Positions 60,997 through 64,000 are shown, counted from the stretch's first letter. The stretch: DNA of 64,000 bases from Salpingoeca rosetta (GCA_033442325.1 JAWQFM010000002.1:666182-730181); one strand, 5' to 3'. Numbers and translations are program-made. Notes: generated by a model not told the origin, from the sequence alone.

Positions 60997-61880
60997 ACAC
61001 ACACACACACACACACACACGCACGCACACACACACACACCTACCTTCAGAGTGCTTCAAAAGGTGGTGGTCGGCGAGCCGCTGCAGTGCCTGCAATGCA
61101 AGCAGGCGGCAACACGTGCGCGTGAGACAACATGATGGCATCTTCCAGTGGTACCACTACCTGCACCACGCACCCAAGACCGTAAGCCATCTGCACCACC
61201 ATGTATGTACACAGGCACCAGTTGAAGGCCGACCTCTGCGCAGAACGGGTCGTGGTTGAGGGCTGCGCGGTAGGATCGAATGGCTTTGATGCGGTTGTCC
61301 TGGTTCTCGAAGATCTTCCCTCGCAACAGCGCCAGCTGTGCCCGCACGTCGGCGATGGGGTGAAAGTCCGCCACCTCCGCATCTGCCACGCGCAGCTCAT
61401 CCAGGTGCTCGTCGTCCACGCCAATCACGTCCAGCGCCTCCTCGCCCCGATCAAGCGCCGTGAAGCACTGGCCAACAATGAGGCGCGCTGCAGGGGACTG
61501 CCGCACCGCGTCGTACTTCACCAGCACGTGCATGGCCCGCTCGTACTGCTGCAGGCTCATGTACGCCTTGGCCAGCAAGTACACGTCCTCCAATGCGCCT
61601 AACGTGGGAAGAGGGGGAAGGGATGAGGACTGGAGGAAGATGGACGGGAGGGTTGATGAGGAGGAGGCACAGGAGCATTGTTGGAAATAGGGCGGAGGGG
61701 ATGCGAAAGGGGGAGGAGAAAGAGGAAAGAAAGCGTAGTAACACCACATGAACGCACACAACACACACACGTACCATCTGTGGCCGTGACGATCTTGTCT
61801 GCCCAGAAAGCTGCAGAGGCAAAGGAGGACGAGGCCATGTACTCCTTCACCTTCCGTCGAAGCGTCTCAACCCACCGCAT
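58368..61880 (-). CDS. CDC16: Anaphase-promoting complex subunit 6 (Cdc16/Cut9), TPR protein; multi-exon
   Basis: SAAFWADKI, DVYLLAKAY...QYERA, LFYLAHQLVD, VTWFAVGSYY, FGPAWIGFAHAFAVEGEHDQAMAAY...SHLPLLYMGMEY, DPAIFHEMGV. TAG at 58368-58370. Confidence 0.95.
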
Positions 61881-62127
61881 CCTGCTTCGTGTGTGCTGCT
61901 TTGGTTGGCCGTGGCACTGTAACGGACAGTGGTGTGTGCTGTTTGCTTGTTGCGTTGCTTTTGCAAGTGCAATTTGCAGTGCAATTTGCAAAAGGAGACT
62001 GAATTCAGACGAATGTAAGCAAGCAAGCATGCACTTTTCTCTCCAACAACTCCTGCCACTCCAGTCCGACACGAGCAGCCGACTCAGACCGCAAAGAGAC
62101 CAAAGAGAGCACAGACCGAAAGACAGC

Positions 62128-63287
62128 ATGGCTGGCAATGATGATACGTTCCCTGCGTGGTTCGAGACACTGATTCGTTCCATTGAAGATGGCTCGTGTG
62201 GCGGTCGAGTCAGGTAAGTTTCTTTCTCATGTTCGTATTTAGGTGTTTGGGTGGTTTGTGTGTGTGTGTGTGCGTGTGTGTGTGTGTCTATGTCTGTGTG
62301 TGTGTGTGTGTCTGTGTGTGTGTATGTGTGTGTGCGTTTGTTGTGTTGTGCGTGTGTGCAGCATCTTCCAGGTTGAGAAGAGTGCCACCGATCGGCAAGG
62401 CGAGGGCGTGCGCATGCGCTCCCACGGTTGTCGACTCATGTGTTCGCATCTAAAACACTTTGAACCATGCTCTTCGCGGCTGGTAGCTTTGGCGAACGTG
62501 ACCCGCGTTGGTCAACAAAACTAACCACGAACATGACCGAAAAGTTGGCTGAAGTTCTGAGAACCCATCACGAAATCGTGACTGATTTAACGTATTGTAT
62601 CTGAATCGGTGATGCATGGTACATTGGAAGAAGCGTTGAGGATGCAACGCCGTGCACATGAGCTTGTGTAAACTTGTGTTACAGCCGAGCATGCGCTGTG
62701 AACTAATCCACATCACGCGCATTTGCGTGTGCTGTGATGTCGTTGCTGTTTTGTTGTTGTATTTGATGTTGTGTTGGTACGCGCGTGCACGTGTGTTTTG
62801 TCTTGCTCAGGCTGACCTTCATTGACTTTGGCGCTGCCGGAGGAGCTGCATTGGCAGAGTCGCTTGGGAGCTTGAACAGCCTGCAATCCCTTCAGTATGT
62901 GTGTGCGTGTGTGTGTGTGTGTGTGTGTGCCGGTGAGTGCGAATAGGATCATTATATAGTTGCTTGTCTTATGCGATTCAATGGACAAGACATAATCTTT
63001 TCCTGTGGGGTTGAGTTTGTGCGTTGTTTGTGCATGTGTTGACTGCGTGATGTTCTCTGAATTGTGTGTGTGTGTGTGTGTGTGCAAGGGGGGAGGTTGC
63101 ATTTCGGGCATGTTTCACTGACCCATGCATGTACGTGGTTTTGTGTGTGTGTGTGTTTGTGGTGTGTGTGTGTGTGTAATCGTGTGTTGATCGTGTGTTG
63201 ATCGTGTTCAGGCTGTCGAACCTTGATTTCGGAAGCAACGGAGGAGCTGCGTTGGCAGAGTCGCTTGGGAAGCCTGCAATCCCTTCA

Positions 63288-63324
<37 letters not shown>

Positions 63325-63457
63325 GAGGGCCGAACTGGTTGCTATGGGAAGCATACCTGAGAGAATAATCTTTTCCTGTGGGGTTGAGTTTGTGCGTTGT
63401 TTGTGCATGCGTGGACTGCGTGATGTTTTCTGAATTGTGTGTGTGTGTGTGTTTGTG

Positions 63458-63495
<38 letters not shown>

Positions 63496-63715
63496 AAGAG
63501 GGAGGGGGGTTGCATTTCGGGCATGTTTCACTGACCCATGCATGTGCATGGTTGCGTTTGTGCATGTACGTGGTTTTGTGTGCGTGTGTGTTTTTGTGCA
63601 TTTGGATGTGCGTTCATGTGTTGATCGTGCTCAGGCTGTTTCGACTTAGTTTCGGCGATGATCAGGAGCTGCATTGGCAGAGTCGCTTGGGAGCTTGAAC
63701 AACCTGCAATCGCTC

Positions 63716-63752
<37 letters not shown>

Positions 63753-64000
63753 TGTTCGTGTGTCTGTGTCTGTGTGTGTGTCGAGGGCCGAACTGGTTGC
63801 TATGGGAAGCATACCTGAGAGAATAATCTTTTCCTGTGGGTTTTGAGTTTGTGCGTTGTTTGTGCATGTGTGGACTGCGTGATGTTCTCTGAATTGTGTG
63901 TGTGTGTGTGTGTGTGTGTGCAAGGGGGGAGGTTGCATTTCGGGCATGTTTCACGTGACCCATGCATGTACGTGGTTTTGCGTGTGTGTGTGTTCGTGGT
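62128..64000 (+). pseudogene. RI-like (NLRC3-type) leucine-rich-repeat gene with one 28-aa LRR per phase-2 exon; several exons frameshifted; continues beyond the window
   Basis: First exon 62128-62213 (MAGNDDTFPAWFETLIRSIEDGSCGGRV, phase-2 GTAAG donor). Degenerate exon from 62372. LRR exons at 62811-62894 (84 nt, LTFIDFGAAGGAALAESLGSLNSLQSL), 63212-63287 (76 nt) and 63635-63717 (83 nt). Confidence 0.7.
62801..64000. repeat. Tandem duplication of ~400-425 bp exon+intron units (3 units visible)
   Basis: Exon starts at 62811, 63212 and 63635. The intron blocks ataatcttttcctgtggg...gttgcatttcgggcatgtttcac...catgtacgtggttttg are shared by all three units. Confidence 0.93.

What the first reader, a model, noticed from the sequence alone, without database searches (positions are those of the whole stretch)
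62811..63717. Tandem one-LRR-per-exon cassette array hypervariable only at predicted ligand-facing codons
Seen: three ~400-425-bp units have near-identical introns and near-identical 3' exon halves (GAALAESLG...LQSL). Their 5' codons differ radically: L-TF-I-D-FG-AA, L-SN-L-D-FG-SN, L-FR-L-S-FG-DD, plus the junction-split codon (CA|G vs AG|G). These coding positions are more diverged than the flanking introns. All units use the same phase-2 frame, so intact copies are interchangeable. Known: these are the variable x positions after the LxxLxL strand of RI-like LRRs, and similar exon-per-repeat shuffling with diversifying selection is described for Ectocarpus ROCO LRR genes. Inference: a diversifying recognition-receptor (immune or prey-sensing) system in a unicellular relative of animals.
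Basis: partly seen in the sequence, partly recalled or inferred. Interest (0 to 1): 0.75.

Follow-up and report, generated by a model that had tools for sequence, protein, structure and literature searches.

The report
Gap-truncated LRR exon cassettes of choanoflagellate Roco
The three repeats are the visible start of the sensor (leucine-rich-repeat) region of a Salpingoeca rosetta Roco GTPase gene, built from one-repeat exons that differ almost only in a 30-base patch. Two of the three are broken as assembled, the array runs into an assembly gap, and positive selection is not shown.

Summary
At 62811-63717 there are three tandem units of 401 and 423 bp. Each carries an RI-type LRR exon with canonical splice sites. 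The first ~30 nt of the exons differ at 43-52% of sites. The rest of the exon differs at 2-13% and the alignable intron blocks at 0-7% (Fisher p 9e-4 to 1e-8).

Only cassette 1 (84 nt) is intact. Cassette 2 has an 8-nt deletion. Cassette 3 has two 1-nt deletions and an in-phase TGA. The array ends at a 7.7-kb run of N.

Just beyond the gap, entered in the same phase, lies the last LRR plus the Roc-COR-pseudokinase exon of a Salpingoeca rosetta Roco gene. Five other paralogous Roco loci, plus a redundant contig, use the same 84-nt, phase-2, one-LRR-per-exon module, which is the NOD/NLRC-type module.

Synonymous sites in the variable patch are at least as diverged as replacement sites (pS 0.73, pN 0.42). 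The pattern is therefore mosaic: old or exchanged patches inside recently homogenised flanks. Positive selection is not demonstrated, and a receptor function is inferred only.

This scan already reported the same design at other S. rosetta loci (s1-435316, s1-435905). Brown-algal ROCO genes are the published parallel.

The parts
62128..62213 (+). First coding exon of the Roco gene. It starts at the ATG and ends AG|gtaagt, in phase 2.
   Evidence: It is 71% identical (17/24, E 6e-12) to residues 12-35 of the paralogue PTSG_06810 (P0003). The ORF and the donor site were read.
62487..62591 (+). Tentative exon 2 (N-terminal cap helix). It is 105 nt, from the acceptor gtag| to the donor AC|gtattg, phase 2 to phase 2.
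   Evidence: This rests on inference only: an open frame, splice signals, phase compatibility, and the same position as exon 2 of PTSG_06810. BLASTP against P0003 and P0002 gave no significant match.
62811..62894 (+). LRR cassette 1. It is an intact 84-nt phase-2 exon. The variable patch is 62811-62840.
   Evidence: The frame is open and the splice sites are canonical. It is 65% identical to an LRR of P0003 (E 7e-7). nhmmer with the cassette profile gives E 5e-11.
62895..63211 (+). Intron 1. It contains TG microsatellites, a ~60-nt block not shared with introns 2 and 3, and two conserved blocks.
   Evidence: Alignment of the units; distances.
63212..63287 (+). LRR cassette 2. It is 76 nt, with an 8-nt deletion in the conserved half that shifts the frame. 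The variable patch is 63212-63241.
   Evidence: nhmmer gives only a partial match, E 2e-4.
63288..63634 (+). Intron 2.
   Evidence: It differs from intron 3 at 4.8% over 251 aligned nt.
63635..63717 (+). LRR cassette 3. It is 83 nt, with two 1-nt deletions and an in-phase TGA. The variable patch is 63635-63663.
   Evidence: nhmmer matches only the 3' half, E 3e-8.
63718..64000 (+). Intron 3. It is cut about 60 nt before its expected end by a run of 7683 N (G000:C2:730182-737864), so a fourth unit is implied.
   Evidence: Beyond the gap an acceptor ctgcag|C leads into a 1386-codon ORF (L012:208-4365) that begins at the same LRR position.

Best explanation
**What it is.** The finding is the 5' part of one Salpingoeca rosetta Roco gene.
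- A short N-terminal exon comes first, then probably a cap exon.
- A tandem array of exon-plus-intron units of about 400-425 bp follows. Each exon encodes one 28-residue RI-class LRR and is symmetrical in phase 2.
- After a 7.7-kb assembly gap comes one giant exon. It holds the last LRR, Roc, COR, a kinase-like domain and a weak KEN-like tail.

**How the array evolved.** The array grew by tandem duplication. Its introns and the 3' two-thirds of each exon (the helix side) have been kept alike, or were recently made alike, by unequal crossing-over or gene conversion. The first ~30 nt of each exon encode the residues that leave the beta strand and form the beta-to-alpha loop. These stretches are old, deeply diverged sequence types that either escaped homogenisation or were moved in as blocks.

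**Likely function (inferred).** The result would be a horseshoe with a constant scaffold and a repeat-specific concave or rim surface, that is, a recognition surface coupled to a GTPase switch. That this acts as a receptor is not shown.

**State of the cassettes.** As assembled, cassettes 2 and 3 are inactivated. A functional mRNA would have to skip them, unless the indels are errors at a low-coverage contig end.
For: **Gene continuity**
- Exon 1 matches the N-terminus of the paralogue PTSG_06810.
- Cassette 1 matches its LRRs.
- The exon beyond the gap starts at the same LRR position in the same phase. It carries Roc (PF08477, 37.7 bits against a cut-off of 27).
- The public protein model P0001 starts just after the gap.

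**Family design**
- Roco loci on C18 (two), C15, C4 and C29, plus the redundant contig C52, all have 84-nt phase-2 one-LRR exons.
- P0003 scores 146.7 bits on PF13516.

**Mosaic history**
- In the window the patch differs at 43-52%, against 2-13% for the rest of the exon and 0-7% for the conserved intron blocks.
- Patch pS is 0.73 and pN is 0.42.
- In the C18 array, x-codon pN is 0.53, patch-scaffold pS 0.35, rest-of-exon pS 0.088 and intron p 0.20.
- Patch distance is uncorrelated with the distance of either flanking intron. Some units share a patch but have diverged introns, and others show the reverse.
- The older arrays on C4 and C15 are diverged throughout.

**Position of the variable codons**
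- In an AlphaFold model of P0003 the LRR region has block-mean pLDDT 86-96. The strands fall on xLx immediately before the exon border. The variable codons lie between strand and helix.
Against: - Only three units are visible and two are broken.
- The rest of the array is hidden in the gap. No further copies exist elsewhere in the assembly, so copy number and continuity are inferred.
- All three cassettes lack the structural Asn (I/L/L) and the G-P-E-G motif of the paralogues. This could mean decay rather than specialisation.
- Exon 2 has no sequence support.
- Low synonymous divergence in the exon 3' part could partly reflect splicing-enhancer constraint rather than conversion.
Confidence: 0.6

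Rival explanations
1. Recent tandem duplicates are being driven apart by positive (diversifying) selection acting through point mutations on the ligand-contact codons. The locus would be an arms-race receptor.
For: - Variation is concentrated at x5, x7, x8, x10 and the loop positions.
- In the C18 array the x-codon pN (0.53) exceeds the local pS (0.35), the intron divergence (0.20) and the rest-of-exon pS (0.088).
- The same claim is published for brown-algal ROCO LRR exons (PMC3341825).
Against: - In this window's patch pS (0.73, near saturation) exceeds pN (0.42). Selection on amino acids does not explain saturated synonymous sites next to flanks that are 0-7% diverged.
- Patch distances are discordant with intron distances, which indicates exchange.
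- With only three short sequences the test has no power.
Confidence: 0.15
2. The visible units are decaying pseudo-exons at the 5' edge of the array, or the whole 5' region is a dead remnant. The unusual patch residues would then reflect relaxed constraint, not function.
For: - Cassettes 2 and 3 are frame-broken and give premature stops.
- All three lack the conserved Asn and the G-P-E-G motif seen in the paralogues.
- 'Inactivated exons' are described in Ectocarpus ROCO arrays (PMC3341825).
Against: - Neutral decay would spread changes evenly. Instead the 54-nt exon remainder and the intron blocks are nearly identical.
- Cassette 1, exon 1 and the 1386-codon downstream exon are all intact.
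- Paralogue C4 has intact cassettes with T/I/M at the Asn position.
Confidence: 0.15
3. This is an assembly artefact. The indels, and perhaps the number and order of the units, come from collapsed or chimeric 454/Sanger reads at a contig end next to an unresolved repeat.
For: - The array stops exactly at a 7683-N gap.
- The assembly is Newbler/ARACHNE from ~400-nt 454 reads plus Sanger reads (PMC4054682).
- The two broken cassettes on contig C52 both sit at the edges of N runs.
- The well-assembled arrays on C18, C4 and C15 show only open-frame cassettes.
- One of the 1-nt deletions is in a TT run.
Against: - Three different patch sequences inside near-identical flanks cannot be produced by collapse, so distinct units must exist.
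- An 8-nt deletion about 700 nt from the gap is not a typical base-calling error.
- The unit design matches that of the intact paralogues.
Confidence: 0.1

Closest known systems
Brown-algal (Ectocarpus, Saccharina) LRR-ROCO genes with exon-per-LRR shuffling (PMC3341825; PMC11378527)
   Same: - The architecture is LRR-Roc-COR.
- Each LRR is encoded by its own frame-preserving exon in a tandem array.
- The genes form a paralogous family.
- Inactivated LRR exons occur within the arrays.
- Variability sits on the predicted binding face.
- Alternative use of cassettes has been proposed.
   Different: - The LRR here is RI class, 28 residues and 84 nt, in phase 2. The brown-algal exons are 72 nt (24 residues) and are described as 'phase 0'.
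- The lineage is different (opisthokont versus stramenopile), so the design most likely arose independently.
- The C-terminal tail is kinase-like plus KEN-like.
- omega > 1 is not shown here.
- No inverted or intronic stray cassettes were seen here.
Exon modularity of the RI-type LRRs of animal NOD/NLRC genes (Hoss et al. 2019, PMC6642158)
   Same: - One 28-residue RI-class LRR per exon.
- The exon-exon border always falls at the same point inside the beta strand.
- The exons are strictly frame-preserving, so cassettes can be skipped or duplicated without breaking the fold.
   Different: - The switch domain is Roc-COR, not NACHT, so this is not an NLR.
- The units here are recent tandem duplicates with homogenised introns.
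- Whether the shared module is inherited or convergent was not tested.
Ribonuclease inhibitor and plant R-gene LRR arrays evolving by sequence exchange with retained diversity at solvent-exposed residues. This comparison rests on my own knowledge of the birth-and-death and gene-conversion models.
   Same: A constant helix-side scaffold, variable residues on the beta strand and loop, and mosaic sequence relationships between repeats.
   Different: Here the mosaic is seen between repeats within a single gene, at exon-intron unit scale. No ligand is known.

Membership tests
RI-like LRR (Pfam LRR_6, PF13516) | 28-29-residue period with an alternating strand and helix | tested here: met
   Intact cassettes are 84 nt, that is 28 residues. 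The model of the paralogue P0003 shows strands every 28 residues, each followed by a 12-residue helix, with block-mean pLDDT 86-96.
RI-like LRR (Pfam LRR_6, PF13516) | Consensus LxxLxLxx(N/C)xL... | tested here: not met
   The L positions fit. The N/C position reads I, L and L in the three cassettes. Paralogue C4 also has T/I/M there in intact cassettes.
RI-like LRR (Pfam LRR_6, PF13516) | A profile match | tested here: inconclusive
   A single 27-residue cassette gives no Pfam hit at E <= 1. It is 65% identical to an LRR of P0003. P0003 itself scores 146.7 bits on PF13516.
ROCO protein (LRR-Roc-COR) | A Roc GTPase domain in the same gene | tested here: inconclusive
   Roc (PF08477) scores 37.7 bits against a cut-off of 27 in the exon beyond the gap. 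That exon is on the same strand, has the same phase, and starts at the same LRR position. The paralogues have an identical layout. Continuity across the 7683 N cannot be read.
ROCO protein (LRR-Roc-COR) | A COR domain after Roc | tested here: inconclusive
   PF16095 COR-A reaches only E 0.23. The exon is 51-54% identical over its first 500 residues to PTSG_05954 and PTSG_06810, which UniRef names as COR-domain proteins.
Exon-shuffled LRR-ROCO candidate receptors (Ectocarpus type) | One LRR per frame-preserving exon, in tandem, with related introns | tested here: met
Exon-shuffled LRR-ROCO candidate receptors (Ectocarpus type) | Positive selection (omega > 1) at exposed LRR positions | tested here: inconclusive
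   In the window's patch pN is 0.42 and pS is 0.73. In the C18 array x-codon pN is 0.53, against local pS 0.35, intron p 0.20 and rest-of-exon pS 0.088. These are Nei-Gojobori counts only. Recombination is evident, and no site model was run.
Exon-shuffled LRR-ROCO candidate receptors (Ectocarpus type) | Alternative splicing or variable cassette content | not testable with these tools
   There are hints only. The annotated PTSG_06810 model omits three intact cassettes. The C52 array differs from the C29 array in unit order and number, although the Roc exons are 99.8% identical.
Animal NLR (NOD/NLRC) | A NACHT/NB-ARC nucleotide-binding domain | tested here: not met
   Pfam on the downstream exon finds Roc/Ras and no significant NACHT. 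Only the LRR exon module is shared.

The most novel reading that the evidence does not exclude
Choanoflagellates would possess a family of LRR-Roco sensors built from NOD/NLRC-type one-repeat exons. Their recognition surface would be diversified by moving short binding-face patches between cassettes and by cassette skipping. This member would couple that variable sensor, through a GTPase switch, to an IRE1/RNase L-like RNase tail. That would make it an innate-immune-like surveillance system in the closest unicellular relatives of animals.
Probability: 0.2. Interest if true: 0.8.

Novelty: new variant of a known kind. Interest (0 to 1): 0.5.

Why it matters
If the cassette arrays are functional, S. 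rosetta has a multi-locus family of LRR-GTPase proteins with a constant scaffold and a repeat-specific binding face. They use the same exon module as animal NOD/NLRC receptors and the same genomic strategy as brown-algal ROCO genes.

That bears on two questions: how modular LRR receptors arose before animals, and whether patch exchange plus exon skipping is a general way to diversify recognition.

This particular locus is a weak exemplar. Only three cassettes are visible, two are broken, and the array abuts a gap. Its main value is to extend the family to an interior, non-subtelomeric member with a kinase-like/KEN-like tail. It also shows that the variable patch differs at synonymous sites too, which argues for exchange or retention rather than simple positive selection.

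Tried and rejected
1. I looked for further copies of the unit in the genome with a DNA query and a cassette protein profile. Only the three local copies belong to this subtype. The other DNA hits were TG microsatellite.
2. I tested whether the unplaced contig C52 fills the gap. It does not: its Roc part is 99.8% identical to the C29 locus and only 91.5% identical to this gene.
3. Pfam on a single cassette, on exon 1 and on exon 2 gave no hits.
4. Exon 2 has no BLASTP support against P0003 or P0002. It is kept only as tentative.
I therefore could not see the public gene calls or any transcript-based model on the 5' side of the gap.
6. I checked whether the frameshifts of cassettes 2 and 3 cancel, since 76 + 83 = 159 nt. 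They do not: the junction reads TAG.
Exons were searched one by one by reference, and the joined step was left out.
8. No site-model test (PAML/HyPhy) was possible, because these programs were not available.

Full report
**Where the window lies.** The window is G000:C2:666182-730181 of a 55.4-Mb genome.

**The observation.** Reading 61500-64000, translating all frames and aligning the units shows three tandem units starting at 62811, 63212 and 63635.
- Each unit has an exon bounded by a canonical acceptor (cag|G) and donor (|gtatgt or |gtgtgt), followed by a TG-microsatellite-rich intron.
- Cassette 1 (62811-62894) is 84 nt. It has one base completing a split codon, then 27 codons, then two bases of the next codon, so it is symmetrical in phase 2.
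- It encodes a 28-residue repeat that fits LxxLxLxxNxLgxxGxxxLxxxLxxL, except that the Asn position is Ile.

**How uneven the divergence is.** Differences are strongly clustered.

| Region | u1 vs u2 | u1 vs u3 | u2 vs u3 |
|---|---|---|---|
| Exon nt 1-30 (patch) | 13/30 | 15/29 | 14/29 |
| Rest of exon | 1/46 | 5/54 | 6/46 |
| Fisher p, patch vs everything else | 9e-4 | 2e-5 | 1e-8 |

Two well-aligned intron blocks differ at 0-7%. This heterogeneity is real and far beyond chance.

- Cassette 2 has an 8-nt deletion in the conserved half, leaving 76 nt.
- Cassette 3 has two 1-nt deletions, leaving 83 nt.
- In the expected phase, cassette 3 runs into TGA. Splicing cassette 2 into cassette 3 gives TAG.
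- So only one of the three cassettes is intact as assembled.
- Intron 1 also carries a ~60-nt block unrelated to introns 2 and 3.

**The gap.** The window ends exactly where a run of 7683 N begins (C2:730182-737864).
- Intron 3 is cut about 60 nt before its expected end, so at least a fourth unit is implied.
- I take the N run for an assembly gap rather than withheld sequence, because the public protein model P0001 begins just after it with an artificial start.
- The S. rosetta assembly was made from ~400-nt 454 reads plus Sanger reads (PMC4054682). Such reads would not resolve a ~420-bp tandem repeat full of microsatellites.

**What lies beyond the gap.** An acceptor ctgcag|C opens a 1386-codon ORF (L012:208-4365).
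- It begins at the same LRR position and in the same phase as the cassettes.
- It contains Roc (PF08477, 37.7 bits against a cut-off of 27).
- It has weak COR-A, kinase and Ribonuc_2-5A signals.
- Earlier notes of this scan (s1-440260 and neighbours) describe that exon as a Roco GTPase with a pseudokinase-KEN tail. I confirmed only Roc and the weak tail signals.

**Evidence that this is one gene.**
- On the 5' side, window 62128-62213 is a start exon 71% identical to the N-terminus of the paralogue PTSG_06810.
- Cassette 1 is 65% identical to that protein's LRRs.
- A possible second exon (62487-62591) fits in phase and position but has no sequence support.
- The most economical reading is a single gene: start exon, cap, LRR cassette array (mostly hidden), then last LRR-Roc-COR-tail.
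Each exon was handled by reference.

**The paralogous family.** The word search with the Roc exon and a six-frame search of the genome found paralogous loci.
- These are on C18 (PTSG_06810 and a close neighbour), C15 (PTSG_05954), C4 and C29, plus a small redundant contig, C52.
- Scanning the DNA upstream of their big exons for AG-84 nt-GT open frames in phase 2, and with an nhmmer cassette profile, showed the same module at every one of them.
- There are ten intact cassettes with a ~285-bp period in PTSG_06810, nine in C4 (one of them 87 nt), seven to nine in C15, and five in C29.
- P0003 scores 146.7 bits on PF13516, the RI-type LRR.
- The one-LRR-per-exon design is therefore a family trait, not a peculiarity of this window.
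- A weaker set of profile hits near contig starts fits the earlier scan notes (s1-435316, s1-435905). Those notes describe a larger, mostly subtelomeric ROCO-TIR family with the same design.
- This locus is interior, 0.73 Mb into a 2.84-Mb contig.

**Is it diversifying selection?** I counted synonymous and replacement differences by the Nei-Gojobori method.

| Array and site class | pS | pN |
|---|---|---|
| This window, patch codons 1-9 | 0.73 | 0.42 |
| C18, hypervariable codons 2, 3 and 5 | 0.46 | 0.53 |
| C18, scaffold codons inside the patch | 0.35 | 0.10 |
| C18, other 17 codons | 0.088 | 0.080 |

- In this window, conserved residues D5, F6 and G7 use different codons in different units.
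- In the ten-cassette C18 array the introns differ by 0.20 on average, or 0.25-0.27 in the 100 nt next to the exon.
- Patch distance is uncorrelated with the distance of either flanking intron. Units 1/9 and 2/5 share a patch, while units 1/4 and 1/5 share introns but not patches.
- The C4 and C15 arrays are diverged about 40-65% throughout, with no contrast between the exon halves.

Together these results say the following.
- (a) The variable patch really is more diverged than its flanks in the young arrays.
- (b) Silent sites in the patch are diverged too.
- (c) So the flanks and the patch have different histories.
- The flanks were homogenised recently by tandem duplication, unequal crossing-over or conversion. 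The patches are older sequence types that were retained or moved as blocks.
- An excess of replacement change at the x codons is suggested in C18: a raw ratio of about 1.5 against local silent sites and about 2.5 against introns. It is not demonstrated, and in this window it is absent.
Substitutions are not evenly distributed, dN/dS is not above 1 here, and there is a hint of copy-number or order variation between C29 and C52.

**Where the variable residues sit.** An AlphaFold model of P0003 was built with a ten-sequence alignment (mean pLDDT 70; block means 86-96 across residues 61-270).
- It puts three-residue strands every 28 residues on the xLx that ends at the split codon.
- A 12-residue helix starts seven or eight residues later.
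- The exon border therefore lies inside the strand, as in human NLR genes (PMC6642158).
- The hypervariable codons are the split codon and exon codons 2, 3 and 5. They lie at the strand exit and in the strand-to-helix loop.
- From established knowledge of ribonuclease inhibitor complexes, this is the concave face and its rim.
- I have secondary structure only, not solvent exposure or a ligand.

**The broken cassettes.** Two readings remain open.
- They may be true inactivated exons, as described in Ectocarpus ROCO arrays (PMC3341825). The mRNA would then have to skip them.
- Or they may be errors at a contig end. The only other clearly broken cassettes I found (C52) both sit at N-run edges. 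The well-assembled arrays on C18, C4 and C15 show only open-frame cassettes.
- The 8-nt deletion about 700 nt from the gap is hard to blame on base calling. One of the 1-nt deletions lies in a TT run, which is typical of 454 errors.

**Comparison with what is known.**
- The closest published system is the brown-algal LRR-ROCO family (PMC3341825; PMC11378527). It shares the domain order, the one-LRR-per-exon arrays, the inactivated exons, variability on the binding face and proposed alternative cassette use. It differs in LRR class, exon length (72 nt), lineage and C-terminal tail.
- The exon module itself matches the human NOD/NLRC module (one 28-residue RI-type LRR per exon, border in the strand, PMC6642158). 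There is no significant NACHT match, so this is not an NLR.
- Full-text searches for Roco or Roc-COR together with choanoflagellate or S. rosetta found no description of these arrays.

**Verdict.** This is a real but partly mis-described feature: the gap-truncated, partly broken 5' end of the LRR cassette array of an S. rosetta Roco gene.
- It belongs to a family-wide design that this scan has already met at other loci and that parallels brown-algal ROCO genes.
- The best-supported mechanism is mosaic concerted evolution with retained or exchanged binding-face patches.
- Receptor function and diversifying selection remain inferences.

Noticed in passing
L020 (G000:C18:495000-500000), cassettes at 1794, 2079 and 2286: The annotated PTSG_06810 protein joins the cassette at 1509 directly to the one at 2571. 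It omits three intact, in-phase cassettes. This is either real exon skipping or a collapsed transcript assembly.
   Followed up: partly
L025 (G000:C52:1-4000) versus L023/L026 (G000:C29): The 4.4-kb contig C52 is 99.8% identical to the C29 Roc exon. Its cassette array is only 91-96% identical and has a different unit order and number. Its two broken cassettes lie at N-run edges. It could be a haplotype, a recent duplicate or a mis-assembly.
   Followed up: partly
L012:359-982 versus L026 and L027: About 620 nt of the Roc region are 91% identical in DNA between this gene and the C29 and C4 paralogues. The whole big-exon proteins are only 56-59% identical. This is either a local conversion tract or very strong constraint.
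   Followed up: no
G000 contig starts: C36:36591, C32:23644, C34:13686, C15:14524, C4:33151, C2:34279, C30:75635: Weak cassette-profile hits lie within ~15-80 kb of contig starts. This is consistent with the separate, mostly subtelomeric ROCO-TIR cassette family noted earlier in this scan.
   Followed up: no
window 63216-63227 versus 63639-63650: The patches of cassettes 2 and 3 share TCGA offset by 2 nt (TCGAAC versus TTTCGA). A compensated pair of 2-nt indels may thus have recoded x7 and x8. It could equally be coincidence.
   Followed up: no
window 61500-61880, minus strand: A divergently oriented TPR gene lies here. Its first exon begins MRWVETLRRKVKEY and ends ...FWADKIV. From memory only, it looks like a CDC16/APC6 homologue. 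Its start lies about 250 bp from the Roco start codon.
   Followed up: no
window 62257-62358, 62898-62929, 63291-63323, 63436-63494 and 63718-63781: Long TG/GT microsatellites sit in every intron of the array and in the first intron. They are plausible substrates for unequal exchange and a likely cause of the assembly gap.
   Followed up: no
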